64,000 bases of DNA from Malacoraja senta (GCA_038087875.1 JAXLNO010002167.1:1-64000), one strand, 5' to 3'; positions 2,183 to 38,200 are shown, counted from the stretch's first letter. Program-made: numbers and translations. Notes: generated from the letters alone by a model not told the origin.

Positions 2183-2242
2183 TAGTTGTGGAGCTGTTGG
2201 TTGTTGAAGTTATACGCGGCACCGTTACTGTTGATGTTGTTT
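2183..2242 (-). CDS. Linker exon A
   Basis: [19 protein letters not shown]; 60 nt; donor gtaagt. Confidence 0.72.
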
Positions 2243-5200
2243 CTATAAAACATAAAAGATGTCACAGTCGGTTATAACGCATACTGTTGCTCTATGACTG
2301 TATCAGGTTCAACTTGTTATTTTTCATTTTCAGGATACAGATGTCACCAGCAATACTGGCATTTATTGTCAATCCCCAATTTCCCCATATTGACGAGACA
2401 AAGGCAAAACTTTCCATGACCAACAAGAGACATAACTGACATACCATCTTTAAATTTCCATGACTGTGGTATGAAGAATTCTCCTGTTCTTGTACAGATT
2501 GTACAATGGAAACCAATGCCACTACTGGACAGCTGCAGCCTGAGCTAAACAGCTCTGCTTAGATATATCTTACATCCTTAACTGGAAGTAGCATTGTAGC
2601 TGCGAGAGTGGATGGAGGGTGTGCTATGAGTCAAGCTGGCCTGAGAAATTATAGACTAGTTTCACTGCTTTAATGGTATAGTCCTCTTCAGTAATGCAAA
2701 ACCCTATATCCCATAAATCGTTACAGGTGTTGTCGATTCTGTATTGCAGAAAAACATTTTACAATAAACAATTGCATTAATGCTGTACACTCAGAATAAA
2801 ACTGACTGGCTCAGATTTCTTACAGGATGCCGAATGGTGAAGGATGACTGGAATGTGGCTGAGAGCACGATAGGGAAATCAAAATAAATCTGAAGTGGGG
2901 AACAATTAAGGTGAGTTAAGAGAGTTAAAGGTTCTTCATTGTGAAAAGGGATCAAAGGAGAATATTAGAGTGTTTGAGTAGATCGGTGGATGTAGAATTG
3001 CATCTGGGACAGAGAAAGAGGGAAGGAGGATGGGAGAGTGTATGGACGGCAGCAGAGGATTAGAATTTGGAAGAAACAATGAGAAGTAGCATGGCCACAT
3101 GAAGAGGCAGGGATAATGGAGAGAATATGGGCTGGACAGTTTGTACAGAGGGGGGAAAGATGATGGATTGAAATATCTGTGGAATTCTCACTGAAACAGA
3201 ATAAAATTCCAAATGCCCTCTCAATTAATGACAGTTTCCTTGCACAAGGCTGTCATATTTACTGTAAATAGTTGTTGTGGATGCTGTACTTGGAGTTGGT
3301 GTTGGCAGAGGCTCACAGCAAAACCGAATTTTATAGTCAAGACATATCTTGACTTCCTCCAAAGGCTCTTTGGTGACTCTGCAGACCAGTCCTACGTCTG
3401 GGTCACAGGTCACATTGTCTGGTGATTCACTTAATGACCACTGAGAGAAATCGGCAAATTTGCACTCGATTTTATTAATTGTATAGGAAACGGAAGGACA
3501 CAAATCTTGTCGTATGGACTCCAGTAATTCAATATCGCCTGGACTGTCTGGAGATGGTCTATGGCCATTAAACCATGCAGACCAGCCACCAATGCAAGTC
3601 CCCTCTGGAAAAGGAGAAGCCAAGGTTCAGTTTATCTTCCAAATGTTAATTAATCAAAAGTACAGAATAAAATAGCAAAATAACTTTTCCCCATTTGATG
3701 GTATTCCTCAGTACTGGCAAGCTTTATAGCTGACAAGACTGCAGCACCTCTTCCCAGACATTGAAAATAGAACAGTACAGCACGGATATTGGCCCTTTGG
3801 CCCACAATGTTTGTGCTGAACATGATGCCTGATAATCTGATCTAATCTGCATGATCCAAATCCCTTTATTCTCTGCACTTCCACGTGCTTATCCAAAAAC
3901 CTCTTAAAGTCAACTACTATATCTGCTTCCACCACCACCCCTGGCAGAGCATTCCAGGCCCCCACCACTTTCTGTGTAAAAGAATTGCCTCAAACATTTA
4001 CATTAAACTTGTCCCATCTCACCTTATAACTATACCATCTAATGTTAGACATTTCCACCCTGGGAAATAGGTTTTGACTCCCTGCCATATCTGTGCCTCT
4101 CATAATTTTATATACTTCTATCAAGTCTCCTCTCAACCTCCGATGTTCCAGAGAAAACAATGCAAGTTTATCCAAACTCTTCCTCTAGCTGAAACCTTCT
4201 AATCTAGGTGACATTCTGGTAAACCTCCTCTGCACCCTTTCCAAAGCCTCCTCATAATTCCTGTAAAGGGGCGACCAGAATTGCATGCAATATTTCACAT
4301 GTGACCTTACCAAAGTCCTATAGAGCTGCACAATGACTTCTATGTCTCCAACAATGAAGGCTGTTGTTGTGGCTCATGTTGCAGCCCCTGGCCGGCAGCA
4401 CTTTCTTCAGGCCACTGCCAGTAACAAGATGTGCTCAATCACAGAGGGGCTCCCTCTCTTCTCACCAGCTCCACCACAGCCGGCTACTCCTTCTCCCGCG
4501 GCTTTGCCCACTCCGCCGCTCCATTGCTGCCTCCTCCTCCTTCACCCTGCAGTCCCCGACATCTTCCAAGGTGGAGTATGTCGGCGACTCCAGGGGAGAT
4601 GGATGTGGAGGGGGCAGGGAAGAGACCAAGTGCACAGAGCGATGGGGGAAAGAGGAGGAGGCAGCAGTTGAGCAGACAAAGTGAGGGTCGGCATTTAGAA
4701 GTAGCAGCTGGCGAGAGTGGAGGGAGCGCCACAATGACCAAGCACATCCTGTCATTGGCAACGGCCCTAAGAAAGCGCTGTCCCCATGGGGCTACAACAT
4801 GAGCCGCAACTGCAGCCACCTCAACCAGACTGTGCAGTAGATAAAGAAGGGCACGATGATGCACGTTGAAAGCCGGGGGTGGGGTGAGAAGCTGGGGCCG
4901 GAAGCAGAGGGGAGATGGTGTGTGCCAGGAGTTGCATTGGCTGTCGGTCAGCTAAAACCAAAACTTGTTATAAAGTGCTCTGTTAAAATGAGGGTTTACA
5001 GTACTGTGATCTTCCATATTGTAAAACCCTAATTCCCTAAGAATCTCCACCACTTCCCTCCCTGTCATTAGCCCACGGCATGTAATTTCACCTCATCCTA
5101 ATCCTGTACAAGGTGTTTCCTTTAGTTTCTCTTCAGTCCTCTTTCGTGACGTCTAAACTTTAGAAGTCACGAAAGCTTTAGACTAAAGCTCATCCTGTCT

Positions 5201-8200
5201 CCCTCCCCTCCACCTTTCTTTGCGCTACTCTTCCCAAACTGGCTGCCACACAACATCCCTTCATAGTCTTCCAATTTAACAGCAACAAGGTCCATCAGAA
5301 TTTATTTTGAAGGACAATGAAAAAGCAATAAGGAAATTAACATAAATCTGTTCCGGGCACTGACAAGGTGTGAAAGAGAGGTAGAGTTTCCTCATTGGAA
5401 AAAGAGATCGAAGAGGAATATTTGCTGCTTTCTCAATAGCCCACTCAGAGTCCTTGTGCGGAAAAATTTGGTACAAGGAGAAACAGCTGTCAATCTCTTA
5501 CCAGTTGTGTAGGTGCTGGTTGATGTAGTTGTAGGCGGTACCTTTATTGTTGTTGTTGTTGTTGTTTCTATAAAATACAAAAGATGTCACAACAAGTTAT
5601 AATACACACTGTGGCTCGATGACTTGGTATCAGGTCAAAATTTTCACTTTTCAATTTCAGGATGTAGGTGCCACCAGCAATGCTGCCATTTATTGTCAAT
5701 CGCCAATTTATTCCATATTAAGGAGACAAAGGCTAAACTTTTCACACCTAACAATAAACATTGAACATAATTTTGCAAAATATATCCCTTTAAGTTGCAA
5801 CATTATTCCAATGATGACAATATCCAAATGACTCAATTCGAGTCATCTGAGACAGAATCAGGGTGTTATTTTCTTCCAAGTAATAAATCAGGCTCCTTTG
5901 GAGACCCACTGTTACCTACCTGGTTTGTAGCTGGGAGTGGTTGTGGTCTGCATCGCTGTTGGTAAGGTTGTTTCTAGAGAGCAGACAAAAACATTTAAAT
6001 TGCACACTGAGATTCTATGCATGTGCTTCGTTCAAATGCTTGCTTCCTGCTGCATGATTCCAAGTATTAGAAAAAAACTTTGGCTAATGTTTCTACACCA
6101 CATGGAAAATAAGAGGGAGCATTGACCATTTAGCACTTTAAACCAACATGATTATGGTTGGTCATCTATCTCTCCCCATCCCCCTTGAGGACTTTTTTTG
6201 AACTTCTACAGATGAAAAAATAGAGATCATATTGACTGGTTGCATCACGGACTGGTTCGGCAACTTGAATGCCCAGGAGCGAAGAAGACTGCACAAAGTG
6301 GTGTGCATGGCCCAGTCCATGACGGGTTCCGATCTCCCCACCAACGAAGGAATTTACAGGAGTCACTGGCTCAAAAAGGCATCCAGCATAATCAGAGAAC
6401 CACACCACCTAGGCCACACATTCATTTCACCCTTGCTATCGGAAAGAAGGCACAGGAGCCTGAAAACTATAGCATCCAGGTTCACGAATAGCTTCTTCCA
6501 TGCAGCCATCAGGCTATTAATTACTACAACCTCCAAATAAGCTCTGAACTAAGACTTGGGGGTACTGGTTTTGTCTTTTTGCACTATTTTTGTTTGTTTG
6601 TGGAAAATAAGAGGGGAAATTTAAACCAAAATGGTGATGGTCATCTATCTCTCCTCATCCCCCTTGAGACCTTTTGAGCCTGGAAGTTGTTCCACCTCCA
6701 TAAATATATTCAGTGACTTGGATTCTTAAGCCTTCTTAAGTGGCAAACTCCATACGGGTCATCACCCTTTGAGTGCAAATATTATTGCTCCTCAGTCCAT
6801 AATCTCTTGCTCAATAATGGGAGACGGTGACCCTCTTAGTCTAGTCTCCACAGCGTGGGAACCCTGTCCTGTTCTGCCAGGATGTTTAAAGTTTCTATGA
6901 GCTTTGTTGTTCATTTGCTAGGTGCTAATCCACCTCCCGCTCTATTCGAAATGATCTCCCAGGCAAATCTTGCCTTATCAAGTGTTGTTTCTGTCAGTAC
7001 ATCATCCAGCGCTTCCTAGATTTACTCCCATCACTCCAGAATATTCGATCATTTGTGGGAATGGTCACTTTTATCGATTGGTTCAAGATAGGTAATTGCA
7101 TTAATGCTGTATCCTTTATGTAAACTAGACTGACCCAGATTTCTTAACTGATGAATGCTGAGTGGTATAGAACACAATCAGCAGAACTTTTTATAATCTG
7201 AAGACTGAAGAGTGAAGGCTAGAGGGTTAGAATTGTGCGATACCACAGAGATAGAAATCTCAGTAATCCATCCTCAGTAATGGAATAGATAAATGGGCCA
7301 AAGCCTGTGATTCAAGATTGTGCTTTGCCAGTTACTGGACAGGAGATGGAAGCTATGACGACAAATCAAATTTTTAAATGTGGTCTGAGGCTAAAGGCTT
7401 TGTTCTTTCTTGCATTTATTTGGAGGAAAAGTTCTGGTCATTGAGTACCGGATGTTGGGTAATCAACCTGAAAATGTAGTGGAAAAATATAGAGGAGAAA
7501 TTGGAGTGGGACATTAGAGAATCAGCACCATTACTCTTCCCGTTAATCACTGAAAGGGACATATTTCACCTCAACATAATCCTGAACATGGGACTTCCTT
7601 CAGATTTTCTCCCGTCTTCTATTGTGACTCCGAGAGCTTATCCTGTCCACCTCCCCTTGCTCTCCTTTTGCGCTACGCCTTCCAAACTGTCTACTACACC
7701 ACATACATTCAAGGCCTCTCAGTTTTAATGACAACAAGGTCCATGTGAATTTTATGGAGGTGAATGAAAAAGCGATAAGATAATCAAGATGAATCTGTAG
7801 CAGAGAGCAGATAAGGTGTGAGAGAGGGTTAAAGGAGGGAAGAGTAAGGGTTCCTCATTGGGAAAAGGAACAAAGATGGATGATAGGCCATGTTTGAGTA
7901 GATTGGTGAATGTAGAATTGCAGCTGAAAACAGATGTTGTACTTGGAATTGTTGTTGCTATATTCTCACAGCAAAATCGAATTTGATAGTCAAGACAGAC
8001 CTTGACTTCCTCCAAGGATTCTATGGAGACACTGCAGACCAGTCCTACGTCTGGGTCACAGGTCACATTGTCTGGCGATTCATTTATTGGCCATTCAGGG
8101 AAATCGGCAAATTGGCACTCGACTTTTTTAATTGTATGGTAAATGGAAGGGCACAGATCTTGCCGTATGGATTCAAGTAATTCAGTATTGCCTGGACTGT

Positions 8201-11200
8201 ATTCAGATGGTGTGTGATCATTATACCATGCAGACCAGACACCATTACATTTCCAGTCTGGAAAAGGAGAAGCTTCCTTCAAGTGTTCATTAACCAAAAG
8301 TACAAAATAAAATAGCAAGATACATATTTCCTCATTTGATGGTATTTCTCAGCACTGGCCCGGTTTATAGTTGTGAAGATGTGCAGCACCTACTCCCAAA
8401 TCTCTGAAACATTTTGCCTTCTTTTGAATCACAATATTTTTGGATGACAAGATATATTAAATCAAAATAATCTGTGGAATACTCATTTGCATTTCACATA
8501 TTGGAGGCACATAATCATGAGCCTATTTCTGCCAATTATGCACATCACTAAATATTGTATCAACTGGTGTTGAATTCTTGATCAGCACAGTCTAATGGGA
8601 ATATTCACTGAAACACAGTCCTCTGAAGATTATCCATAATTTACAACACAAAGTCCACAGCTACAATTAATTCAAAAGCAAATGTTTAGAAAATGCATTA
8701 TCTGAGAAAGCTCAGTGAAAGTTGTACGTTGCTGCTTTCTCAATGGCTCACCCAGAGACCTGTGCCGACAAACTTGGTGCAAGGATAAACAACCGTCAAT
8801 CACTTACCAGCTGTGTAGCTGCGGGCCGATGTAGTTGTGGGTGGTACCTTTGTTGTTGTTGTTTCTGTAAAACATAAAAGATGTCACGGCAAGTTATAAT
8901 GCACACTGTTCCTCGATGACTTGGTATCAGGTCCATCTTTTCATTTTTTATTTCAAGGTGTAGGTACCACCAGCAATGCAGGCATCTATTGTCAATTCAC
9001 CATTGCCCCATGTTAAGGAGGCAAGTGCTCAACCTTCCATCAGCATCCTTTTGTGTTTCCATTCATCACATTCAGTTAGATTGTCATGTTCACAATAGAT
9101 TTTCTTCTTCATGTTGCCCTTTAAATTGCAACATAAATCCAATTATGCCATCCAATCAAAGCAATCAATTAGGAAGAATAATGTGAGATAGAATCAGTGA
9201 TATTTTGTTCAAAGACGGAAGAATAAACCAGGTTCCTTTGAAGAGCAACTGTGGGCAAGAAGTACAGTAATCCCACTGTTACCCGTCTAGTTTGTAGCTG
9301 GTAGTAGATGATGTTGTTGTTTGAAACTCTTTTGGTGAAGTTGTTTCTCAATGGTGTTAAGGAGTGATAGAGAGTTAAAGAAGGGCAGAGTAAGAGTTCC
9401 TCATAGGGAAAGGTATCCAAGTTGAAGGATACTCTGTAGCTTAGATCGGTGGCTTGAGAATTACTGCTGGAAATAGACAGAGGGAAGGAGGATGAGAGAG
9501 TGTATGGACCGCAGCAGAAGGAAGTCGTCGGTGAGGGATAGAATTTTAAGAAAATGAGAAGTAGCATGGCCACATGAAGAGTGGGGATTAATGGAGAGAA
9601 TATGGGCTGGCTAGTTTGTACAGAGCTCATTAGAGGGGAAACGTGATGGATGGAAATGCATCAGGAACTCTCACTGAAACAGATAAAATTCCAAATGCCC
9701 CATCAATAAAAGACAGTATCCTTGCACATGACTGGCATATTTACCTGAAATTGTTGTTGTTGATGTTGTACTTGGAGTTGTTGTTGCTACATGCTCATAG
9801 CAAAATCGAATTTGATAGTCAAAACAGATGTTGACTTCCTCCAAAGGCTCATTGGAGACTATGCAGACCAGTCCTAAGTCTGGGTCACAGGTCACATTGT
9901 CTGGTGAATCATTTAGTGGCCAATAAGGGAAATCGACAAATTGGCACTCAACCTTTTTAATTGTACAGTAACTGGAAGGACACAGATCTTGCCGTATGGA
10001 TTCCAGTAATTCAGTATCGCCTGGACTGTATTCAGTTGGTATGTGGTCATTATACCATGCAGACCAGACACCATTACATTTCCAGTCTGGAAAAGGAGAA
10101 GCAAAGGTTCAGTTCATCTTCCTTCAAGTGTTCATTAACCAAAAGTACAAAATAAAATAGCAAGATACATATTTCCTCATTTGATGGTATTTCTCAGCAC
10201 TGGCCGGGTTTATAGTTGTGAAGATGTGCAGCACCTACTCCCAAATTCCTGAAACATTTTGCCTTCTTTTGAATCACAATATTTTTGGATGACAAGATAT
10301 ATTAAATCAAAATAATCTGTGGAATACTCATTTGCATTTCACATATTGGAGGCACATAATCATGAGCCTATTTCTGCCAATTATGCACATCACTGAATAT
10401 TATATCAACTGGTGTTGAATTCTTGATCAGCACAGTCTAATGGGAATATTCACTGAAACACAGTCCTCTGAAGATTATCCATAATTTACAACACAAAGTC
10501 CACAGCTACAATTAATTCACAAGCAAATGTTTAGAAAATGCATTATCTGAGAAAGCTGTGAAAGTTGTACGTTGCTGCTTTCTCAATGGCTCACCCAGAG
10601 ACCTGTGCCGACAAACTTGGTGCAAGGATAAACAACCGTCAATCACTTACCAGCTGTGTAGCTGCGGGTCGATGTAGTTGTGGGTGGTACCTTTGTTGTT
10701 GTTGTTTCTGTAAAACATAAAAGATGTCACGGCAAGTTATAATGCACACTGTTCCTCGATGACTTGGTATCAGGTCCATCTTTTCATTTTTTATTTCAAG
10801 GTGTAGGTACCACCAGCAATGCAGGCATCTATTGTCAATTCACCATTGCCCCATGTTAAGGAGGCAAGTGCTCAACCTTCCATCAGCATCCTTTTGTGTT
10901 TCCATTCATCACATTCAGTTAGATTGTCATGTTCACAATAGATTTTCTTCTTCATGTTGCCCTTTAAATTGCAACATAAATCCAATTATGCCATCCAATC
11001 AAAGCAATCAATTAGGAAGAATAATGTGAGATAGAATCAGTGATATTTTGTTCAAAGACGGAAGAATAAACCAGGTTCCTTTGAAGAGCAACTGTGGGCA
11101 AGAAGTACAGTAATCCCACTGTTACCCGTCTAGTTTGTAGCTGGTAGTAGATGATGTTGTTGTTTGAAACTCTTTTGGTGAAGTTGTTTCTCAATGGTGT

Positions 11201-14200
11201 TAAGGAGTGATAGAGAGTTAAAGAAGGGCAGAGTAAGAGTTCCTCATAGGGAAAGGTATCCAAGGTGAAGGATACTCTGTAGTTTAGATCGGTGGCTTGA
11301 GAATTACTGCTGGAAATAGACAGAGGGAAGGAGGATGAGAGAGTGTATGGACCGCAGCAGAAGGAAGTCGTCGGTGAGGGATAGAATTTTAAGAAAATGA
11401 GAAGTAGCATGGCCACATGAAGAGTGGGGATTAATGGAGAGAATATGGGCTGGCTAGTTTGTACAGAGCTCATTAGAGGGGAAACGTGATGGATGGAAAT
11501 GCATCAGGAACTCTCACTGAAACAGATAAAATTCCAAATGCCCCTTCAATAAAAGACAGTATCCTTGCACATGACTGGCATATTTACCTGAAATTGTTGT
11601 TGTTGATGTTGTACTTGGAGTTGTTGTTGCTACATGCTCATAGCAAAATCGAATTTGATAGTCAAAACAGATGTTGACTTCCTCCAAAGGCTCATTGGAG
11701 ACTATGCAGACCAGTCCTAAGTCTGGGTCACAGGTCACATTGTCTGGTGAATCATTTAGTGGCCAATAAGGGAAATCGACAAATTGGCACTCAACCTTTT
11801 TAATTGTACAGTAACTGGAAGGACACAGATCTTGCCGTATGGATTCCAGTAATTCAGTATCGCCTGGACTGTATTCAGTTGGTATGTGGTCATTATACCA
11901 TGCAGACCAGACACCATTACATTTCCAGTCTGGAAAAGGAGAAGCAAAGGTTCAGTTCATCTTCCTTCAAGTGTTCATTAACCAAAAGTACAAAATAAAA
12001 TAGCAAGATACATATTTCCTCATTTGATGGTATTTCTCAGCACTGGCCGGGTTTATAGTTGTGAAGATGTGCAGCACCTACTCCCAAATTCCTGAAACAT
12101 TTTGCCTTCTTTTGAATCACAATATTTTTGGATGACAAGATATATTAAATCAAAATAATCTGTGGAATACTCATTTGTATTTCACATATTGGAGGCACAT
12201 AATCATGAGCCTATTTCTGCCAATTATGCACATCACTGAATATTATATCAACTGGTGTTGAATTCTTGATCAGCACAGTCTAATGGGAATATTCACTGAA
12301 ACACAGTCCTCTGAAGATTATCCATAATTTACAACACAAAGTCCACAGCTACAATTAATTCACAAGCAAATGTTTAGAAAATGCATTATCTGAGAAAGCT
12401 GTGAAAGTTGTACGTTGCTGCTTTCTCAATGGCTCACCCAGAGACCTGTGCCGACAAACTTGGTGCAAGGATAAACAACCGTCAATCACTTACCAGCTGT
12501 GTAGCTGTGGGTCGATGTAGTTGTGGGTGGTACCTTTGTTGTTGTTGTTTCTGTAAAACATAAAAGATGTCACAGCAAGTTATAATGCACACTGTTGCTC
12601 GATGACTTGGTATCAGGTCCATCTTTTCATTTTTTATTTCAGGGTGTAGGTACCACCAGCAATGCAGGCATTTATTGCTGGTCAATTCACAATTGCCCCA
12701 TGTTAAGGAGGCAAGTGCTCAACCTTCCATCAGCATCCTTTTGTGTTACCATTCATCACATTCAGTTAGATTGTCATGTTAACAATACATTTTCTTCTTC
12801 ATGTTGCCCTTTAAATTGCAACATCAATCCAATTATGCCATCCTATCAAAGCAATCAATTAGGAAGAATAATGTGAGATAGAATCAGAGTGATATTTTGT
12901 TCAAAGACGGAAGAATAAACGAGATTCCTTTGAAGAGCAACTGTGGGCAAGAAGTACAGTAATCCCACTGTTACCTGTCTAGTTTGTAGCTGGTAGTAGA
13001 TGATGTTGTTGTCTGAAACTCTTTTGGTGAAGTTGTTTCTCAATGGTGTTAAGGAGTGATAGAGAGTTAAAGAAGGGCAGAGTAAGAGTTCCTCATAGGG
13101 AAAGGTATCAAAGTTGAAGGATACTCTGTACTTTAGATCGGTGGCTTGAGAATTACTGCTGGAAATAGACAGAGGGAAGGAGGAAGGGAGAGTGGATGGA
13201 CCGCAGCAGAAGGAAGTCGTCGGTGAGGGATAGAATTTTAAGAAAATGAGAAGTAGCATGGCCACATGAAGAGTGGGGATTAATGGAGAGAATATGGGCT
13301 GGCTAGTTTGTACAGAGCTCATTAGAGGGGAAACGTGATAGATGGAAATGCATCTGGAACTCTCACTGAAACAGAATAAAATTCCAAATGCCCCTTCAAT
13401 AAAAGACAGTATCCTTGCACATGACTGGCATATTTACCTGAAATTGTTGTTGTTGATGTTGTACTTGGAGTTATTGTTGCTACATGCTCATAGCAAAATC
13501 GAATTTGATAGTCAAGACAGATGTTGACTTCCTCCAAAGACTCATTGGAGACTGTGCAGACCAGTCCTACGTCTGGGTCACAGGTCACATTGTCTGATGT
13601 TTCATTTAGTGGCCAATAAGGGAAATCGACAAATTGACACTCAACTTCTTTAATTGTACAGTAACTGGAAGGACACAGATCTTGCCGTATGGATTCCAGT
13701 AATTCAGTATCGCCTGGACTGTATTCAGATGGTTTGTGGTTATTATACCATGCAGACCAGACACCATTACATTTCCAGTCTGGAAAAGGAGAAGCAAAGG
13801 TTCAGTTCATCTTCCTTCAAGTGTTCATTAACCAAAAGTACAAAATAAAATAGCAAGATACATATTTCCTCATTTGATGGTATTTCTCAGCACTGGCCCG
13901 GTTTATAGTTGTGAAGATGTGCAGCACCTACTCCCAAATCCCTGAAACATTTTGCCTTCTTTTGAATCACAATATTTTTGGATGACAAGATATATCAAAT
14001 CAAAATAATCTGTGGAATACTCATTTACATTTCACATATTGGAGGCACATAATCATGAGCCTATTTCTGCCAATTATGCACATCACTAAATATTATATCA
14101 ACTGGTGTTGAATTCTTGATCAGCACAGTCTAATGGGAAAATTCACCGAAACACAGTCCTCTGAAGATTATCCATAATTTACAACACAAAGTCCACAGCT

Positions 14201-29200: not shown

Positions 29201-32200
29201 ATAAACTATTGCATACCAGATCATAATTTCAGAGTTTAAACAATGGAGAATGAAATTATTCTCAGTTAATTAATTAAGGAATTTGATTTTGTCACAATAA
29301 ACAGTAGACCAAAATTACTCCAAGGAGATCTTGATCCCCTCAATGCATTTAATTTGGGGGAAAAAATTCCCTGCAGTTTATCCAAATGTATGGATGGATC
29401 AGTGAATATTGGCTCCGAGTCATTCACTTTAATAAGACTTTAGCATAAGTCAATAGCGATCACTTTGCAATTAAAGTTCTGGGGAGAAGGCAGAAGAATG
29501 GGGTTAGGAGAGAGGGATAGATCAGCCATGACAGGGTAGACTTGATGGGCTGAATGGTCTAATTCTGCTCCAATCACTTTTGAACATAAACAGTTTCTCC
29601 AATGAACAGGTACCAGCATATTCATTCTGAAATTAAACTATCTCTAAACTAAAATTGTGGACAATACAAATAAATTAATTGTGAACATTTTGTAAGCTTC
29701 AGTAGTGAGACTCATTGCATGCAATATCCTGAAGTCAGACAGCTATTTGTAATTGGATTTGTCAAATTAAGATCAATAGACCATTATTTGTTTATTTGCA
29801 CTTTATCTGCTTATTTATTCATGTATATATTTATATAATGGCATATTGACACACTGATCTGTTCTGTATACATGCCTACTATATTCCATTGTGCTGAAGC
29901 AAAGTAAGAATTTCATTGTCCTATCTGGGACACATGACAATAAACTCTCTTGAATCTTGAATCTTGAAAAACTGAATTTTCCGCCCAGCTTTTCTTCCCT
30001 AGTCCATGAGACATAAGTTGTTGAATTCCTTACGTTTACCCCATAGAAGTTGGCTAACAAGATGCTCCCCGACCCGCTGAGTTCTTCCAGCACTTTTCAA
30101 AAAACACTTTTCTTTAGCTATCTAATTTTGAACATTACATTTGTTTAGCATCTTTTACAATATGGCAAAGCATTTTTTAATCCTATAAGACACTTTTTAA
30201 GTCTGATCATTATATGAATGCAGAAAAATGAAAAGCCAATTGACACACACCAAGTTTCCATAGAAAGTAAAATGTTTAAGAATCAATATTACCTCATATA
30301 CTAAAACTGTAATTTACTTCATATACGATATAGCCTGCACCCATTTAACAAAGCATCTGGACTCCTTTACATCCCCCTGAGAGAGTTGGTTTAGAATCTC
30401 TACTGCAAGATAGTATCCCCAATTGTGCAGCTCCTCCCAGAGACTGCTCTGTGCTGTAATTAAAGTGTTTCCTTATTAGTTTGTAACATCATTCATGTTT
30501 CTTTTCATGTTTGAAGCTGTCTAATTATCTTTGAATTCTAAGTAGTTAATTCCATAATAGCTCAGCTACTAGCTCCAAGTTGCTCCTGCACTTGTAGCAA
30601 TGACGCTGTATATTCAATTGTATGTTGAGAATTATTCATTCAAGGAATGTATTAAAGCTTATTCCAAAACATCTACACGAGTCCAATTTTATTATACAAA
30701 AAAGTCATAAAAGAAGTTTACTCCACATCTTCTCAACATGATTTCCAAACAGCAGACACAAGCAAACACAATGGATAAATCTTTCACTATTGGTGAAAAA
30801 ACTCAAAAATTATATTTTTAAATCCAATATAAGTCGCCAGTATGAATACTTCGATGCAAGATAGCATAGTATCGTAAAATATGAGACTAGCCCATTGAAA
30901 TATTTTGCATATCTTTTTAAATAGGCACAAGAGGAAACCATTACCTGTGGTGGTTGCTGCAACTGTTGTTGTACTTAATGTTGAATTAATGACTTCTGTG
31001 GTTGTAGCTAATGCTGGTGAAGAAAAAGATAAAGAGGTCATAACACAGCTTTCAATGATTATGATATAAAATTAATAGCATTTTGAAGATTATTTTCAGT
31101 TTTTAAGCTTAATTGGCAACTGAAAAATCTTAAATGTAAAAGTAAAAAAATCATGGTCTTTTGGATGCACGTCCCCATAACACTTCATAAAGCATCATTG
31201 GGATCCTGTCTTTGAGTTCCTCTCAGCAAAGCAAAGCAGGGATGAGCTGGTGTGAAATAGGTGGTGTGACTCTAATCATTTCAACGAGAATGATTCGAGG
31301 TTTTCATATTGTTTGTTTCTGGGCCAGTTAAAATAGGTAAAAAGGTATATGGATAGGACAGGTATAAAACAGTAAAAAATAATACACACCTCTGCATATC
31401 ACTTTCCCATTCTTGCACACACTGCAAAAGATTTAAATAATTTAGGTTAATGAGAGATTAGGTTAATATGGTTTTTGCTATTTTAACACATTAATTATTT
31501 TGGTTAGACAGCTTGCTACTTTCTTGGCAATATCTGTTGTCATGAAAGCTAACTTTAATACAGCTGCATTAGAAATTTCATGAAATAATTAAAGGGCCTG
31601 TCCCACTGTACGAGGTAATTCAAGAGTTCTCCCAAGTTCTCCCCTGATTCGAGCTCGTGTAATGATTGCATTAGTCGAAACAGGGCGGACCACGTGAAGG
31701 TTGCAATCTCCCACCCCCCACAAGCTCCTACGTACCCGCTACATACATTACACGAGCTCGAATCAGGGGAGAACCCGGGAGAACTCTTGAATTACCTCGT
31801 ACAGTGGGACAGGCCCTTAAGTCTCTAACCTCTAGAAATAAATGAGATAGTTCAAACAAAATAGATAATCACCTTCCATTTCGTATTAGCTTTAGATGGA
31901 AGCTATATGTGCAGAAATGTACCTCATCTGCAACCTCACAAATGCATCCACCAACAAACTTTCCCAAGTCAATCCTGCAATATTCCCATCACCATTTAAC
32001 ATCCTTTCGAAATGGCAGACAGTGCCAACCATTTCATTGAGTTACCAAAAACATAAGAGGTCTGTGGCCTCATAAAATTCACTTCTCTCATTATTCTTAC
32101 AGGAAAGGAATAAAAACATGTTACTGATTGTATGCCTCATTGTCACCTTCCCCTCAGCTAACAATGATTCATTCTACATTTTCATTGAGCATCGTCCTAT

Positions 32201-35200
32201 TTGATGTCTCGTATTCACACCTTGCCCTTCCATATCTCTCTGTCTCTCAGTCTGAAGAAGGGTCTCGACCCGAAATGTCACCCATTCCTTCTCTGCAGAG
32301 ATGCTGCCTGTCCAATCTTCCAAAATAGTTTTATAGTGACAATAACTGTACATGTACACAATATTATGAAATAGCTACACATAAGTGAATATTTTTGTTA
32401 AAGAAAAGAAAATATTTAAAATTCATGGCTAATATGAACTAAAAATGGAAGGTGCATTTATAGATACCATTCTTCACAATCATTCATGGTTCTATTGCCT
32501 GGCAGCAATATTTTCCCATTATAATAACAAGTACAATCAGGTAGATTAACACATTTCATTTTATTTTCGTCCAGATACGGAGTATTCTCAGGGCATCTTG
32601 CATAACAACCTGAAGTAAATAGAAAGTGATAATGAGGACAGGGCATTGATAACATGGTTTAGTGACTTAGATTAATAAACACTTCAACAGGTTCATATTG
32701 TTCCAAACTTGTTTTAAAACTTGAATTATTAAAGGATCACAAATACCCACCATTCAATTAAATAAAAATGCCATTGTGTATACAGAACATTTGTAAAAAA
32801 ACTATATAAATACTTAGTCAGGAATATTACCATTTACAAAAACAATCTTATAATACACAGGGTGAATAAGAATCAAAATACGTGAGGTTTTCAAGCACAA
32901 CCTTCAAGAACTGCAGAATATTTTTTCCCGATGTGATGGTCGGAGCATGTTCGCGTTTTTATTGTTCCACAAGGCTGATAGTGCCAGCTGCACTCACCGG
33001 GAGTGTTATAATAGTCACAGTACACAGCTGAAATGTAAAACAGAAATAGTTCTCCATTATGACCTGCAATTTGTTTCCAGTTTTATAAATCTCTGATTTG
33101 TTACACATGATTGGCGGTATTCCTTTCCTGTTACTAATGATCAGACAAATGCTTCATTAGCTGAACTTCATAACAAGAATAATGGTAGGAGCATTAATAA
33201 CAGCTTGTTGTTATTAAAAACGAATCAGATAGCAATGAACAACATTCACGTCTATCCATAGGTCAGAGTGGGATTCGGATGGAGAATTAAGGTGACCCAA
33301 GTGTAGAGGAGACTTTTTATTGGTTTGTTGCCTCCTACATTGTTATGAGGTCCAATGTAATCTTATGGAACAGTACCTCATTTTATGTCTGGGCCCATTG
33401 CAGCTCCTGGACTCAATATTGAACTTTATAACTGCAAGTAACGTGATTTCTCTGTCCATGTTAGTCACCCATCTGTGACATTAGCTCCAGGTGTTTTTTT
33501 ACTGCCCTTTTAATCTCTGGGAGTGGTGGAATGTGGAATTTGACCCGCTGGGCTTGTCTCACGAATCCGCATTTCACACCCCCACATTCTTTTGTCTGTT
33601 TTCACTCTCTAACGGCTCCCATTTACACATTGACCAGTTAACCTAGTCCACAATGAAACACAAAGTGCTGGTGGAACTCAACGAGTCAAGTAGCATTTGT
33701 GGAAGGAATGGACAGACCGCATTTCGGATCGGTCCCCTTCTTCAGAGAAGGAAGGGTCCAAACTCGAAACGTCATCTGTCCATTCCCTGAGTTCTTCCAG
33801 TACTTTGTATTATGCTCAAGATTACAGTATCTACAGTCTCATATCTCCATGTAACCTTGTTTATAGTTTATTGCCATGGTCAGCCTGGTTTTACACAGTC
33901 ATAGACATCTCCCCTCCTCCATGCTCCCTGCAGCTAAACAAGCTTCTATTGTGTCCTTAACAGTTTTGCCGAAAGGTCTTTAACCTGAAACATTTACTAT
34001 TTATCTTCTTAAGGGTATGGTTGTTGTTTTCCATTCGATAGTCACCAAAGTCAACAGGAATTGCACTTGTGCAGTGAAAGTTGGGTACAGGAAATGAGCT
34101 TTTATTTGAATCCAACTCCACCAGGTTTTAATTTCAGTTGGAGATTTAAAATTTACTCTAACTTTTAAACTTTTTGTTCATACTCTTTTATTTCATAGTT
34201 CCGTCATTTGTCTATGATATCTGTCCAGGATTTTACATTGTTTTATCCTCTACTTTTCAGTTTAGGCTCATGTGTGGCCATTCTTTAAAGACAGAAACAA
34301 AATGCTGGAGTAACTCAACGGATCAGGCAACATCTCTGGATAAAAGGAATAGGTGGCGTTTCGGATCAAAACCCTTCTTCAGGCAATTCAGTCTGATTTG
34401 AGTCTGATTGCTTAAAGACTCACGATGCCCCTGCACCTGTTCAGTCAGATCCCAGAGTACATTTGAACAGCTGTAATGTTATCAAGTCACAGAGCAATGT
34501 CCCAGGGCAAATGCAAGTGTAATGCTGCTCCTTCGCATCTGCTAACTACAAAGCTAAAGGCATTGTTTACATTATCTGATGTACCCAGGGGAACCCAGTG
34601 GAGCAGAGATCCGTGTTTTTGCGGTAACTGGAGGAGTATTTATTTTCCCTTCAGACTCCCACTTACATACTAAAGTATCCACCTAGCACCACGTTTTTGG
34701 GGAGAAAGGGCCAGCTACAACAATGATAGGAAAGAAGGGAGCCTGTCACTGAAGTAAAATGATGTATAATACATAATAAATTATCTTTGTTATTCTTCAC
34801 ATTATTAACCATTCTCAAAGAAATTCAAGAACATAATTTCTTTGAGAATTGCTTGCATTGATCAAATAAGTTTAATAATATCTACAACTTAATACTTACG
34901 ACACAAGTCCGGTGTTCTCCAATTAATACAAACTCCAGCTTTATTACAAGCTTCTGCATACACAGCTACAGCAGTGCAGAAGCCCAGATATTTCCCTTCC
35001 ATGTCACAGGCACAAGCTTCTTCAACACAAGCATCATAATATGGGACTGGGTCTACCTGATACAGCGCATGATCATAATGTTAGAAAGAAGGTTTTGCAT
35101 ACAGATCAACTTTGATTTAATTTATTTTGTTCAAAATAAACTACCTTACCTTTTTATGGCAATTTTGAAACACAACATCCTTCATTATGTTGCATCTCCT

Positions 35201-38200
35201 CTGAGCCCATGCTAAACAGTATGGGTTTCTATCGCAAGGAAATGTTTGATTCAATATATCTGAACAAGACAATGAAGATTTCCAGGTGTTTCCAAATTTT
35301 ACAGTATTGGTCACCAAAGAATTTCCTTTTGTTTTTAGATCATCTGCAACATCGTCATTGAAATTTCCACACAGTCCACATACTTTGTTCTGTAAGTGAA
35401 AATACATTATTACAATGTTTTGACTGAGAAATTCCATTGGGCTATTCCCAATCTGCAGTTGTAAATCCGAGACAAAACCAAAAATTAAACGCAAATGATA
35501 GAGACTGGACTCTCCACCAATGACCAACTTAGGGATGTGGAATTTTAGTGCCCTAAACAGTTGAGTAAAAAAATATAATTTCATGTTGTCATATCTTCTT
35601 ATAATAAATTCCTATCCCAGCTATGATGGTCTTGAATCAACACAGTTTCACATTTCCCAACTCCTTGGCCTCTTGGCAAACAACCTCTTATACTCCAACC
35701 AATTCTATTTCTTAGCTTCTTAAATTCTGTAGCTTTGGCTTTTAAACAAAAGTAAAATACAACAATTTACCAGAATACTTTTTGTATTAAATCGGCATTG
35801 AAGTTTAAAATCTGCTGGCCCGACAAGAAAGTTGAAAATAAAAATAAAAAATGCACTAAATACTCGGCAGGTCAGGCAGCATTCGAGGAGGACAAAACAG
35901 TGAACATTTCACCTAATAGTCATTCATCAGCATCATTCCAGCAACTATATTTTTAATTTTGTTTTTCTATGATGGAGTCAAACGCATTTTCGCTGCAATT
36001 TTCAACAGTGTACAATAATACAGAGAACATGCTTAATTAAGATATGCTGATATATATTTATATGGTACATATTTACTTAAGATTATTGTAAATAATATGC
36101 TGAATGCTGGAATGAAACCTATTGCAGCATGCAATGTATATTTATTTCTGCAAGAGATTAAGTTCTTGATATATTTATTTATTGTTAACCACATTAAAAA
36201 ATGCAAGCATTAATATCTAATCTCTAAACAGTACTTACTTTCCATCTTGGGTCCAATGTTATCGAAAACTTTGTGTGTCTATCCCATATCACAACAATCC
36301 CATTTGAAAATGAGAGGATTAAATAAAGTCCGACCGTGTGAAATGAATAAGAATTATCTCGGCACTGGGTTTGACGAGATTTACCAGTCCTTACCACTCT
36401 TCCATCAGTTAGAAGGAATTCTACCTCCTAAAGATAAGAAGTCGCAATGAGTTCTTAACATGTTCATAATGATGTGCAAATACAGATAACCCTAAAAAAA
36501 ATAGTTTAATATTTTAAAAGTATACAGTGACAAAATTTATAGTAAAATACAGATCCCCCTCCCCTTCACTCCTGTAATACATGCTATTCCAATCTGTTTT
36601 GTTCTCAACCTGAAACTTGTGTATGCATTTGCAAGTAGTTTTCAGGTCTACTTTGTTTTCATTTTCATGTGTGTTTTTTAAGCTGCATCCTCTGAGCTTC
36701 CCTCAGCTTTGAAAGCACGTTGAAAGCACCTACATTATTGATGTATTCAAGAGAGAGTTAGAGAAAGCTTTTAGGGATAACAGAATCTAGGGATATGGGG
36801 AGAAAGCAGGAACAGGGGGGCTGATTTTGGATGATCAGCCTTAATCATATTGGATGTTGGTGCTGGCTTGAAGGGCCAAATGGCCTACTCCTGGACCTAT
36901 TTTCTATGATTCTATGTTCTATGTTTCTATGAAATGTTGTAGCTTCTACTTCTTGTCAAATTCTAAGCCTTGTAGCCACTATGCCTGGGCGAGTAGCCAG
37001 CCGGAGAGAGTAGGCATTGAATCTGTATGGAGCACATGGATGTGAGAGGGCCACACAAGGTCAGCCCAGCAGGAGGAGGAGGAGGACTGGAGTTAGGATG
37101 CAGTGAGGAATTCACCAGGAAAGATGTGTTTTTACTTAATACCAGGCATGGATTGTGAAAGGGTGATTTAGGTATGATCTGAATACAAAAATAGATGCTT
37201 CCACTTCTGAAATGTGCTGCATGATTTGGGCATTTATTTTAAAAATCATAACTTAAGTTCAGGATATTTGTCAGATTGGCAACACTCTGGCCATACACAG
37301 CAGGTAACAACTCTTGTTCAGGACCAGAACTATCTTGCTGCCTTAACCTGGATTCAAGGACTAATTAACCAGAATTCACAGTGTTATAAGGCATTACGAA
37401 CTTGCTGTTGCCTCAAAAATGCAATGGAGGCTATTCTAAATTAAGGAGGCTTGGTTTTCTTTTTTTCTGAGAATTTATTATATTATTTATTGTGTGGTAA
37501 ATGTGTCTTTTGGGAGTTGAAGAAAATATTGATTGGTTTAGGAAGCAACATGCTGCTAAATTAATTTTTGGGGTGGTAGGATTGACTAATTCTTAAGTGG
37601 TGGGATTGCATTCTTTTCCCAGAGTGAAACCTTTTCATCTTTTAAAATGTAGGGGATTCTTTTTAATTTCAGATGGTGACAAGACTTTGGCTCAGTTGTA
37701 CAGATGCAATGTGGTAAAAAAGTAAATGTTATATAGTAGTAAAGAGTTTCTGTAACATTTGCACCCAACTTGAATACTCCACTGATCTATTCACATCTAT
37801 TTCCTCGCACCCCATGATTACATAGATACAAATTAAATAGATACAAACAAAGAGATCAAAATCAAAATTAAAGATACAGACCGCAAACAAAATTTTGATG
37901 TTTCTTGAGCAGGTCACTCCATTTTCGCAACATGGAACACTTTCTATTAATATTTGGAATGTCCCTTCTCCTTGATTGCAATGGTCCTAAATAGAAAGAT
38001 ACAAACAAATATGGCATAAGGCTGAAGAAAGGCTTTTACACCTTCTTGTTGTGTGCCCATGAGATTGAACTCCTGCTTCCGAAGTTGATGCTTTTTAAAT
38101 TCCGAATTAACTCCCTAATATTTCACAAACAAAAATGGCAGAGAAGTGAGTTGCACTGGACCAATCAGAATGATTGGAATGGGCGCTGAAAGATGCCCCT

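What the first reader, a model, noticed from the sequence alone, without database searches (positions are those of the whole stretch)
2183..37986. MUC19-type gel mucin whose central region is a string of CysD domains
Seen: D3 motifs [42 protein letters not shown] and PVYCDYYN, followed by at least 7 intact CysD exons (plus one donor-less copy) separated by only ~35-aa Thr-rich linkers, ~133 aa per module. Knowledge (recalled): these D3 motifs are typical of MUC19/porcine submaxillary mucin, whereas MUC2/5AC/5B have VPCG and GDCECFC. CysD domains characterise MUC2/5AC/5B and are not described in mammalian MUC19. Inference: a hybrid architecture, a MUC19-type head on a CysD-dense, PTS-poor beads-on-a-string body. 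It could form a highly cross-associated or adhesive gel (skin mucus, oviducal or egg jelly), and CysD could be ancestral in the MUC19 lineage.
Basis: partly seen in the sequence, partly recalled or inferred. Interest (0 to 1): 0.85.

Follow-up and report, generated by a model that had tools for sequence, protein, structure and literature searches.

The report
Skate MUC19-type mucin with CysD beads
This window holds most of an intact skate mucus-protein gene whose head belongs to the MUC19 family but whose middle is a chain of small disulfide-locked CysD domains, showing that these domains, usually credited only to MUC2 and MUC5 mucins, were probably present in the MUC19 family early in jawed vertebrates.

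Summary
The minus strand carries one gel-forming mucin gene that runs off both ends of the window.

- **Head:** 24 GT-AG exons give an open 1,062-aa D1(part)-D2-D'-D3 region.
- **Middle:** short Thr-rich exons come next, then eight CysD exons (PF13330). Seven have canonical splice sites. One has lost its GT donor.
- **Module:** each is a 57-nt Thr micro-exon plus a 342-nt CysD exon, 133 aa in all.
- **Repeat:** six modules lie in a young 1.85-kb tandem repeat, 96-100% identical.

- D3 and D1-D2-D' trees place the gene, with 34 other shark and ray mucins, inside the MUC19 clade (100/100). An AU test rejects a MUC2/5 affinity (p 1e-7).
- The gene has the MUC19-specific cysteine changes, including loss of the MUC2 C1088/C1090 equivalents.
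- Bichir and reedfish MUC19-clade proteins also carry a CysD.
- MUC19-clade CysDs form their own clade, apart from MUC2/5 CysDs. Inheritance within the lineage is therefore the better reading.

Novelty is limited. Public shark and ray gene models already show D1-D3 + CysD array + D4 (+ cystine knot in two), misnamed mucin-2-like or mucin-5AC-like. No paper I could search describes it. This scan noted a similar MUC19/CysD gene on another piece of this genome (s1-210366). Expression, tissue and synteny remain untested.

The parts
58444..63053 (-). D1 assembly, partial: end of VWD1, then C8-1 and TIL-1. Five exons: 63053-62937, 61443-61365, 61256-61165, 58875-58677, 58569-58444. The first ~120 aa lie beyond the window.
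   Evidence: tblastn to sawfish P0013 with GT-AG junction refinement. Pfam C8 and TIL.
44044..54963 (-). D2 assembly (VWD2, C8-2). Eight exons: 54963-54843, 54743-54605, 54470-54378, 54287-54215, 54116-53979, 49652-49497, 45164-45070, 44170-44044.
40869..42225 (-). TIL-2 and the D' region. Four exons: 42225-41979, 41895-41843, 41757-41675, 41020-40869.
   Evidence: Pfam TIL
35150..39779 (-). VWD3. Four exons: 39779-39641, 37986-37882 (MUC19 signature PCC), 36427-36239, 35389-35150 (signature PYC).
   Evidence: Pfam VWD
34900..35056 (-). C8-3 exon. It carries the MUC19-type motif [11 protein letters not shown], which lacks the equivalents of MUC2 C1088 and C1090.
   Evidence: Pfam C8, E 1e-15; PMC6739602
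32468..33027 (-). TIL-3. Two exons: 33027-32902 and 32609-32468.
   Evidence: 88% identity to P0013 and 100% (first exon) to Amblyraja P0352; junctions
31390..31421 (-). 32-nt exon encoding [11 protein letters not shown], the end of the D3 assembly. It ends in phase 1.
   Evidence: Matches the Amblyraja and Pristis models
30945..31013 (-). 69-nt Thr/Ser-rich exon, phase 1-1. The proposed acceptor follows a T-rich tract. The Rhinoraja gene model uses an upstream acceptor and skips the 32-nt exon instead.
   Evidence: the acceptor choice is inferred
25414..25494 (-). 81-nt poly-Thr exon, phase 1-1.
21098..21186 (-). Relic fragment of a CysD exon, about 30 aa from the middle of the domain, followed by a stop.
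8261..20428 (-). Young tandem genomic repeat with units of 1829-1850 bp. Each unit holds one CysD exon, one 57-nt Thr micro-exon and one 64-nt frame-breaking relic micro-exon.
   Evidence: the repeat finder; unit identities 96-100% in exon and non-exon parts
18980..19942 (-). Module 1: micro-exon 19942-19886 plus type A CysD exon 19321-18980.
17133..18095 (-). Module 2: micro-exon 18095-18039 plus CysD exon 17474-17133.
15286..16248 (-). Module 3: micro-exon 16248-16192 plus CysD exon 15627-15286.
13438..14400 (-). Module 4: micro-exon 14400-14344 plus CysD exon 13779-13438.
11588..12550 (-). Module 5: micro-exon 12550-12494 plus CysD exon 11929-11588.
9745..10707 (-). Module 6: micro-exon 10707-10651 plus CysD exon 10086-9745.
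7916..8864 (-). Module 7: micro-exon 8864-8808 plus an older type A CysD copy starting at 8257. The canonical donor is lost. A weak in-phase GT at 7943 would keep the whole domain.
   Evidence: Pfam E 6e-15
5502..5567 (-). 66-nt Thr micro-exon.
3263..3604 (-). Type B CysD exon (starts EGTCIGGW). It is orthologous to the unit that was amplified in Rhinoraja.
   Evidence: Pfam E 3e-17; CysD tree
2183..2242 (-). 60-nt Thr/Ser micro-exon. The gene continues beyond the window start.

Best explanation
The window holds most of one intact gene for a secreted, polymer-forming mucin of a skate. The gene is a member of the MUC19 lineage. That lineage expanded in sharks and rays into a cluster of paralogs.

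The encoded protein starts with the usual D1-D2-D'-D3 head. It continues through about 70 aa of Thr-rich linker into a string of CysD domains joined by ~35-aa O-glycosylation linkers. In orthologs it ends with a last, distinct CysD and a D4 assembly, followed in the Rhinoraja and sawfish models by a cystine knot.

Likely mechanism, inferred from solved MUC2, MUC5 and VWF structures:
- The cystine knot dimerises C-termini in the ER.
- D3 links N-termini by disulfide in the Golgi. Here this can use only the TIL-3 cysteine, because the C8-3 interface cysteine (MUC2 C1088) is absent, as in human MUC19.
- The many CysD beads add reversible non-covalent cross-links. The expected result is a stiff, densely cross-associated and relatively sugar-poor gel.

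The number of beads is set by recent tandem duplication of a 1.85-kb exon-plus-intron unit. Related skates amplified a different unit.

Shown: gene structure, domain identities, paralog assignment, and repeat age and independence. Inferred: a single transcript, polymerisation chemistry, gel properties and tissue.
For: - **Gene model.** 24 plus 20 exons, all GT-AG, translate to open frames of 1,062 and 1,080 aa that share one exon. Every exon after D3 is phase 1-1.
- **Domains.** Pfam finds VWD, C8, TIL and Mucin2_WxxW.
- **CysD fold.** The CysD model has pLDDT 84.8. In the PDB at E<=0.01 it matches only solved CysD domains of MUC5B, MUC5AC and MUC2, TM 0.54-0.71. A sequence search gives the same hits.
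- **D3 identity.** 58-60% to mammalian, coelacanth and bichir MUC19, against 43-47% to MUC2/5 and 40% to MUC6.
- **Trees.** D3 ML tree: MUC19 plus the elasmobranch clade at 100/100. AU test against MUC2/5: delta lnL 185, p 1e-7. D1-D2-D' tree: 99.
- **Signature cysteines**. They agree with the published statement for human MUC19 (PMC6739602).
- **Orthologs.** Gene models in Amblyraja (98% identical in D3), Rhinoraja and Pristis join D3, CysDs and D4 in one gene; a cystine knot was detected in Rhinoraja and Pristis, not in Amblyraja.
- **Constraint.** dN/dS is 0.45 against Rhinoraja over D1-D3.
- **Independent amplification.** Rhinoraja has its own 2,782-bp repeat unit.
Against: - No transcript or protein evidence was examined for this genome. 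No gene model from this genome appeared in the searches.
- The C-terminal D4 and cystine knot are outside the window and are known only from orthologs.
- The six young CysD copies show no purifying selection. Exons are no better conserved than introns, and omega is about 1 on very few changes.
- One copy lacks its donor.
- The LRRK2/CNTN1 synteny expected of MUC19 could not be tested.
- No elasmobranch MUC2/5 CysDs were available for the CysD tree.
Confidence: 0.85

Rival explanations
1. The CysD array is a separate gene lying downstream of a D1-D3 gene on the same strand. It would be like the VWD-less CysD-chain protein of the lateral-line cupula, and automatic gene models merely fuse the two.
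For: A CysD-only family exists, with 27 CysDs reported in Amblyraja (PMC11765562). No transcript was checked here. About 11 kb of repeat-rich intron separate exon 25494-25414 from the last D3-side exon, and about 5 kb separate it from the array.
Against: - Exon phases run unbroken from D3 into the array, with no stop, start or signal-peptide exon between them.
- Models of all ten shark and ray proteins scanned for CysDs put the CysDs after D3; D4 follows in every model checked with Pfam.
- The last CysD before D4 is orthologous across species.
- The window's CysDs group with MUC19-clade CysDs, not with CysD-only proteins.
Confidence: 0.05
2. It is a MUC2 or MUC5 ortholog, as the database names of its relatives suggest (mucin-2-like, mucin-5AC-like). 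The MUC19-like motifs would be convergent.
For: Relatives carry these automatic names. The architecture with CysD and D4 looks like MUC2/5.
Against: - Two independent trees contradict it.
- The AU test gives p 1e-7.
- Five clade-specific cysteine columns are shared with MUC19.
- CysDs fall outside the MUC2/5 CysD group.
Confidence: 0.01
3. CysD domains were not ancestral in MUC19. They were captured once by exon shuffling from a MUC2/5-type gene, either in an early fish ancestor or separately in sharks and bichirs.
For: CysD exons are symmetric (phase 1-1), which makes them easy to shuffle. Teleost and tetrapod MUC19 lack them. The CysD tree has few columns and no shark MUC2/5 CysDs.
Against: Elasmobranch and bichir MUC19-clade CysDs form one clade at 100/97, separate from all MUC2/5 and CysD-only CysDs. 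This mirrors the D3 tree. D4 is retained in the same proteins. Per Lang 2016 (PMC4948705), CysD arose early in Bilateria and occurs in invertebrate mucin-like proteins.
Confidence: 0.2
4. The gene is real, but the young array is evolving neutrally or is partly an assembly artefact, so the bead count has no functional meaning.
For: Exons are not better conserved than introns among copies, and omega is about 1. One copy lost its donor. A relic CysD fragment and relic micro-exons show ongoing decay.
Against: - The six young copies share the same eight cysteines and the WxxW motif, with intact splice sites.
- The copies fall into two sub-lineages with fixed differences, so they are not simple assembly duplicates.
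- CysD-dense arrays recur in all ten shark and ray models scanned for CysDs.
Confidence: 0.15

Closest known systems
Mammalian MUC19 (pig submaxillary mucin, human and mouse MUC19)
   Same: Same orthology group by the D3 and D1-D2-D' trees. D3 is 58-60% identical. Both share the gained cysteines (PCC, QTQC, PYC) and the loss of the MUC2 C1088/C1090 equivalents (PMC6739602).
   Different: Mammalian MUC19 has no CysD and no D4, and it has a very long PTS region (PMC4948705). The skate gene has at least 7-8 CysDs with short linkers, and its orthologs have D4.
MUC2, MUC5AC and MUC5B
   Same: Overall architecture: D1-D2-D'D3, CysDs interspersed with PTS, D4, cystine knot. The CysD fold matches solved MUC2/5 CysDs.
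   Different: A different paralog lineage. D3 lacks the C1088-type interface cysteine. CysDs belong to a separate clade. CysDs fill 43-74% of the span from first to last CysD in the shark and ray models, against 23-29% in the MUC5AC and MUC2 models compared; a partial seal MUC5B model reaches 60% (mammalian models are often collapsed).
Shark and ray RefSeq/UniProt gene models named mucin-2-like or mucin-5AC-like (Amblyraja XP model P0352, Rhinoraja P0211, Pristis XP_051890192, Heterodontus, Carcharodon and others)
   Same: Orthologs or close paralogs with the same architecture. Rhinoraja has 9 CysDs at a 134-aa period. Heterodontus has 15.
   Different: They are named after the wrong family and, as far as I could find, are not discussed in papers. 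Copy number and the amplified unit differ by lineage.
Bichir and reedfish MUC19-like proteins (Polypterus XP_039617047, Erpetoichthys XP_051776840)
   Same: MUC19 clade, with a CysD in both and a fourth VWD in the reedfish protein. Their CysDs are sister to the elasmobranch ones.
   Different: A single CysD, not an array.
VWD-less CysD-chain 'Mucin-5AC' of the lateral-line cupula (PMC11765562)
   Same: A chain of CysD domains with short linkers, proposed to build a specialised hydrogel. 27 CysDs are reported in a skate.
   Different: It has no VWD, C8 or TIL head. In the CysD tree, CysD-only proteins fall on the MUC2/5 side.
Stickleback spiggin and teleost MUC19
   Same: MUC19 clade. Some keep a fourth VWD (PMC4948705, Odontesthes).
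   Different: No CysD was detected in the teleost members scanned.

Membership tests
Gel-forming mucin (VWF-like secreted mucin) | Three N-terminal VWD-C8-TIL assemblies (D1, D2, D'D3) | tested here: met
   Pfam VWD, C8 and TIL on the exons. The spliced 1,062-aa open model is collinear with P0013. The first ~120 aa are outside the window.
Gel-forming mucin (VWF-like secreted mucin) | Thr/Ser/Pro-rich O-glycosylation (PTS) region | tested here: met
   Thr-rich exons 31013-30945 and 25494-25414, plus the micro-exons and the CysD exon tails. These stretches are short: ~70 aa before the array and ~35 aa between beads.
Gel-forming mucin (VWF-like secreted mucin) | C-terminal cystine knot for dimerisation | tested here: inconclusive
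   Outside the window. Present in orthologs Rhinoraja P0211 and Pristis P0013 (PF00007, E 2e-7 to 3e-7).
MUC19 orthology group | The N-terminal assemblies group with MUC19 and not with MUC2, MUC5 or MUC6 | tested here: met
   D3 tree 100/100. AU test p 1e-7. D1-D2-D' tree 99.
MUC19 orthology group | D3 lacks the cysteines equivalent to MUC2 C1088 and C1090 (Javitt 2019) | tested here: met
   EGKYLGFC replaces GGDCECFC. The state is shared by all MUC19 and all elasmobranch clade members in the alignment (PMC6739602).
MUC19 orthology group | Location between LRRK2 and CNTN1 | not testable with these tools
   The window is all intragenic. 10-kb flanks of four sawfish paralogs and the Rhinoraja ortholog showed only mucin genes.
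MUC19 as described in mammals | No CysD and no fourth VWD | tested here: not met
   8 CysD exons in the window. D4 is present in orthologs. This describes mammalian MUC19, not the orthology group.
MUC2/MUC5 group | D3 phylogeny, and the GDCECFC and VPCG motifs | tested here: not met
CysD domain (Pfam PF13330 Mucin2_WxxW) | Full-length match above the gathering score, with the WxxW motif | tested here: met
   56-63 bits against a cut-off of 22.4, profile positions 1-88 of 88. WSAW is present in all eight copies.
CysD domain (Pfam PF13330 Mucin2_WxxW) | CysD fold | tested here: met
   AlphaFold model with pLDDT 84.8. The only PDB matches with E<=0.01 are CysDs of MUC5B, MUC5AC and MUC2.
CysD domain (Pfam PF13330 Mucin2_WxxW) | Conserved cysteine set | tested here: inconclusive
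   Eight Cys per copy. In the six young type A copies the near-invariant second Cys of the C-terminal CC pair is Tyr, and a new Cys sits in SSYC. Disulfide pairing was not examined.
VWD-less CysD-chain cupula mucin (PMC11765562) | No VWD domains, with a signal peptide directly before the CysDs | tested here: not met
   D1-D3 exons lie upstream, in phase and on the same strand.

The most novel reading that the evidence does not exclude
The ancestral jawed-vertebrate MUC19 was a complete mucin with CysDs and a D4 assembly. Sharks, rays and bichirs kept that form, while teleosts and tetrapods stripped it down.

In elasmobranchs the gene multiplied into a cluster. One paralog became a CysD bead polymer whose bead number is reset again and again by lineage-specific tandem exon amplification.

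Its D3 lacks one of the two interchain cysteines. It may therefore build a polymer network with a different topology from MUC2/5 gels.
Probability: 0.55. Interest if true: 0.55.

Novelty: new variant of a known kind. Interest (0 to 1): 0.5.

Why it matters
Papers on mucin evolution treat CysD domains as a hallmark of MUC2, MUC5AC and MUC5B, and treat MUC19 as a simpler mucin without CysD or D4. This gene and its relatives in sharks, rays and bichirs show a different picture: the MUC19 lineage carried both features early in jawed vertebrates, and the mammalian form is derived.

The finding also corrects a set of misleading database names (mucin-2-like, mucin-5AC-like).

It offers a natural series of mucins with 2 to 15 CysD beads and short glycosylated linkers. 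That series is a ready-made test of how CysD density tunes gel stiffness.

It also provides a D3 assembly with only one of the two interchain cysteines, for testing how MUC19-type mucins polymerise.

The practical weight is moderate. The parts are all known, and invertebrate mucin-like proteins with CysD already suggested an old origin.

Tried and rejected
- **Tandem Repeats Finder** found nothing because its longest period is 500 bp. The repeat finder showed the 1.85-kb repeat instead.
- **A second Thr-rich candidate micro-exon** in each unit (for example 18581-18528, similar to the sawfish PTS repeat) was rejected as coding. With its only AG and GT sites it is 64 nt long and breaks the frame.
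- **Reading 31053-30946 from the Rhinoraja-type acceptor** is incompatible with the conserved 32-nt exon. I propose an internal acceptor at 31013.
- **Amblyraja locus.** The look-up failed because isoform X2 is not on record.
- **LRRK2/CNTN1 synteny.** Five loci with 10-kb flanks showed only mucin genes.
- **A gene model from this genome** was not among the hits.
- **Papers.** Lang 2016 supplements and Lang 2007 are not held. Searches for MUC19 plus shark, skate, elasmobranch or WxxW found no description of this architecture.
- **Structure job.** I dropped those rows and did not send them elsewhere.
- **dN/dS between type A and type B CysD exons** was discarded because my codon registers were offset.

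Full report
**What is in the window.** The sequence is vertebrate-like, with 36-47% G+C and no N. Earlier notes of this scan call the genome a skate. The best protein matches agree: 98% identity in D3 to Amblyraja radiata and 95% to Rhinoraja. All coding signal of interest is on the minus strand. Stop-free stretches rich in cysteine run from about 63 kb down to 2 kb. Pfam assigns them as follows:
- C8 and TIL at 58.9-58.4 kb
- VWD at 55.0-49.4 kb
- C8 at 44.2 kb
- TIL at 42.3 and 41.0 kb
- VWD at 39.9-35.1 kb
- C8 at 35.1 kb
- Mucin2_WxxW (CysD): the three copies scanned (19.3, 8.3 and 3.6 kb) match over the whole 88-position model. With the five further copies identified by sequence there are eight between 19.3 and 3.2 kb.

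**Gene model.** I used the sawfish protein P0013 as a guide. At each junction I chose the GT/AG pair that kept the frame and gave the best alignment. This produced 24 exons from 63053 to 32468. They translate to 1,062 aa with no stop and are collinear with residues 124-1188 of the guide.

Downstream lie:
- a conserved 32-nt exon (31421-31390, [11 protein letters not shown])
- two Thr-rich exons (31013-30945 and 25494-25414)
- seven units of a 57-nt Thr micro-exon plus a CysD exon
- a 66-nt micro-exon (5567-5502)
- an eighth CysD exon of a different type (3604-3263)
- a last 60-nt micro-exon (2242-2183)

All of these have AG and GT sites. From the 32-nt exon onward every exon ends in phase 1, and all later exons are multiples of three. 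With copy 7 left out, the product from the last D3 exon to the window's end is open for 1,080 aa. About 2,100 aa are therefore encoded here, and the gene runs off both ends.

- All four motifs are present.
- The 342-nt exon, the 133-aa module and the ~35-aa linker are correct.
- The donor-less copy is the one starting at 8257. Its GTAAAT donor has been replaced. A weak in-phase GT at 7943 could still keep the whole domain.

**The repeat.** Six CysD exons sit in a head-to-tail genomic repeat of 1,829-1,850 bp. Units 1-4 and units 5-6 form two sub-lineages. Identity is 99-100% within a sub-lineage and 96-98% between them. Exons are no better conserved than the rest of the unit. Between sub-lineages there are 10-11 non-synonymous and 2-3 synonymous changes. 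The copies are therefore very young, and selection on them cannot be seen. All six share the same eight cysteines and the WSAW motif.

Each unit also holds a 64-nt Thr-rich relic. It resembles the sawfish PTS repeat but breaks the frame. A ~30-aa CysD fragment lies at 21186-21098.

**Which mucin is it?** An 81-aa D3 exon searched against 1.84 billion proteins found shark and ray proteins closest. Their automatic names were inconsistent: mucin-19-like, mucin-2-like, mucin-5AC-like, mucin-6-like.

Over the whole D3 assembly (366 aa), identity is:

| Compared with | Identity |
|---|---|
| Mammalian, coelacanth and bichir MUC19 | 58-60% |
| Squamate and frog MUC19 | 51-56% |
| Teleost MUC19 | 50% |
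| MUC2, MUC5AC, MUC5B | 43-47% |
| MUC6 | 40% |

The ML tree used 95 D3 assemblies (LG+C20+F+G4, 380 columns). It unites 35 shark and ray sequences with ray-finned-fish MUC19 and lobe-finned/tetrapod MUC19 on a long branch with 100/100 support. Outside that clade fall:
- MUC2
- MUC5
- a MUC6 clade that includes caecilian, zebra shark and elephant shark sequences
- lamprey mucins
- invertebrate outgroups

Forcing the shark and ray clade to join MUC2/5 costs 185 log-likelihood units (AU p 1e-7). An independent tree of D1-D2-D' (730 columns) gives the same clade at 99. Its internal order matches the species tree.

At the residue level, the whole clade shares three extra cysteines (PCC, QTQC, PYC). 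It lacks two cysteines of the GDCECFC motif. Javitt et al. 2019 state that human MUC19 lacks the cysteines comparable to MUC2 C1088 and C1090 (PMC6739602). The skate gene shows exactly this state. PVYCDYYN is not diagnostic.

**Is the architecture one gene, and is it old?** Pfam on full-length relatives shows these counts:

| Species | VWD | CysD |
|---|---|---|
| Amblyraja | 4 | 4 |
| Rhinoraja | 4 | 9 |
| Pristis | 4 | 2 |
| Mustelus | 4 | 7 |
| Cetorhinus | 4 | 11 |
| Heterodontus | not counted | 15 |
| Carcharodon | not counted | 9 |

A D4 VWD-C8 is present in all three orthologs checked (Amblyraja, Rhinoraja, Pristis). A C-terminal cystine knot was detected in Rhinoraja and Pristis. Linkers between beads are 33-103 aa in most models. 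CysDs fill 43-74% of the span from first to last CysD.

Outside cartilaginous fishes, the reedfish and bichir MUC19-clade proteins each carry one CysD, and the reedfish protein has four VWDs. The teleost and coelacanth members scanned have no CysD.

In a tree of 69 CysD domains, all MUC19-clade CysDs (elasmobranch plus bichir) form one side of a 100/97 branch. The other side holds CysDs of MUC2, MUC5AC, MUC5B and VWD-less CysD-chain proteins. Within sharks and rays, the last CysD before D4 is a separate, orthologous type. This pattern fits vertical inheritance of CysD in the MUC19 lineage, with loss in teleosts and tetrapods, better than recent capture. Two weaknesses remain: the alignment is short, and no shark MUC2/5 CysDs were available.

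**Lineage-specific amplification.** The Rhinoraja locus (L001) has a 2,782-bp tandem unit. It holds the type B CysD exon (the window's single copy at 3604-3263) plus a truncated type A fragment, repeated six times. The sawfish locus has only two CysD exons. This window and Amblyraja amplified type A instead. Bead number has therefore been raised independently in related skates.

**Constraint.** Against Rhinoraja, 1,058 aligned D1-D3 codons give dS 0.12, dN 0.054 and dN/dS 0.45. This fits a functional but fairly fast-evolving gene.

**CysD membership.** A phmmer search of solved structures hits only CysD domains (MUC5B, MUC2, MUC5AC). An AlphaFold model built on 56 CysD sequences has pLDDT 84.8. 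At E<=0.01 its PDB matches are the same CysD structures and nothing else. The six young type A copies carry a cysteine change: the near-invariant second Cys of the C-terminal pair is Tyr, and a new Cys appears earlier. Amblyraja shares this change. I did not analyse disulfide pairing.

**Genomic context.** In the sawfish, at least four MUC19-clade genes lie between 30.75 and 31.53 Mb of one chromosome. Paralogs of several other species share one contig. Lang et al. 2016 already reported three Muc19 paralogs in the elephant shark. They described CysD as a feature of Muc2/Muc5 and noted that some spiggins keep a fourth VWD (PMC4948705). No flanking non-mucin gene was reached, so LRRK2/CNTN1 synteny is untested.

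**How it probably works.** This is inference from solved MUC2, MUC5 and VWF structures and from the CysD literature (titles; PMC3195396, PMC6861317).
- C-terminal cystine-knot dimers are joined through D3 disulfides.
- The C1088-type cysteine is missing. All other cysteine columns shared by MUC2/5/6 are kept. The N-terminal link would therefore rest on the TIL-3 cysteine, as suggested for human MUC19.
- A dense row of CysD beads with short glycosylated linkers should give many weak protein-protein contacts, hence a stiffer, less hydrated gel than PTS-rich mucins.
- The tissue is unknown. By analogy, frog Muc19 is a skin mucin, spiggin is a kidney-made nest glue and pig MUC19 is salivary (PMC4948705). 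A VWD-less CysD chain builds the lateral-line cupula gel (PMC11765562).

**Novelty.** The parts and the overall mucin plan are known, and gene models with this architecture are public. What appears undescribed in the papers I could search:
- these shark and ray mucins are MUC19 co-orthologs;
- CysD and D4 belong to the early MUC19 plan;
- bead number is set by recurrent tandem exon amplification.

I rate it a new variant of a known kind, of moderate interest.

Noticed in passing
window 18528-18581, and the same place in each repeat unit (20375-20434, 16681-16734, 14834-14887, 12986-13039, 11137-11190, 9294-9347): Each 1.85-kb unit holds a second Thr-rich micro-exon-like stretch ([18 protein letters not shown]), similar to the 20-aa PTS repeat of the sawfish ortholog. 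With its only AG and GT sites it is 64 nt long and would break the frame. It is probably a decayed micro-exon carried along by the duplication.
   Followed up: partly
window 21098-21186 (minus strand): A short fragment of a CysD exon, about 30 aa from the middle of the domain and followed by a stop. It lies upstream of the array, in an intron rich in repeats.
   Followed up: partly
window 9745-19321, six young CysD exons: The six young type A CysD copies replace the near-invariant second Cys of the C-terminal CC pair with Tyr and carry a new Cys in SSYC. The older copies (8257, 3604) keep CC. Amblyraja shares the change, so it predates the split of the two skates. Disulfide pairing was not examined.
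   Followed up: partly
L001 57466-74034 (Rhinoraja longicauda CM130185.1): The orthologous gene of another skate has its own 2,782-bp tandem unit. It holds the other CysD type plus a truncated type A fragment, repeated six times. This is an independent amplification.
   Followed up: partly
window 30945-31421 (minus strand): The Rhinoraja gene model skips the conserved 32-nt exon and uses an upstream acceptor in the next exon. The two choices are mutually exclusive by phase. This is either alternative splicing or an annotation slip.
   Followed up: no
window 52064-52843 (-), 22843-23319 (+), 27170-27475 (+): Fragments of LINE-type reverse transcriptase (Pfam RVT_1, and the ALKBH8_N-like tail common in fish LINEs) sit in introns of the mucin gene, on both strands.
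   Followed up: partly
window 52992-53216 and 61914-62132 (minus-strand reading): Two intronic stretches share a similar sequence (translated GAAVELLP...[13 protein letters not shown].), probably copies of a SINE-like repeat.
   Followed up: no
L002-L005 (Pristis pectinata CM019873.1, 30.75-31.53 Mb): At least four MUC19-clade mucin genes lie within 0.8 Mb, some with and some without CysD. One gene appears split into two models (789 aa plus 1,287 aa).
   Followed up: partly
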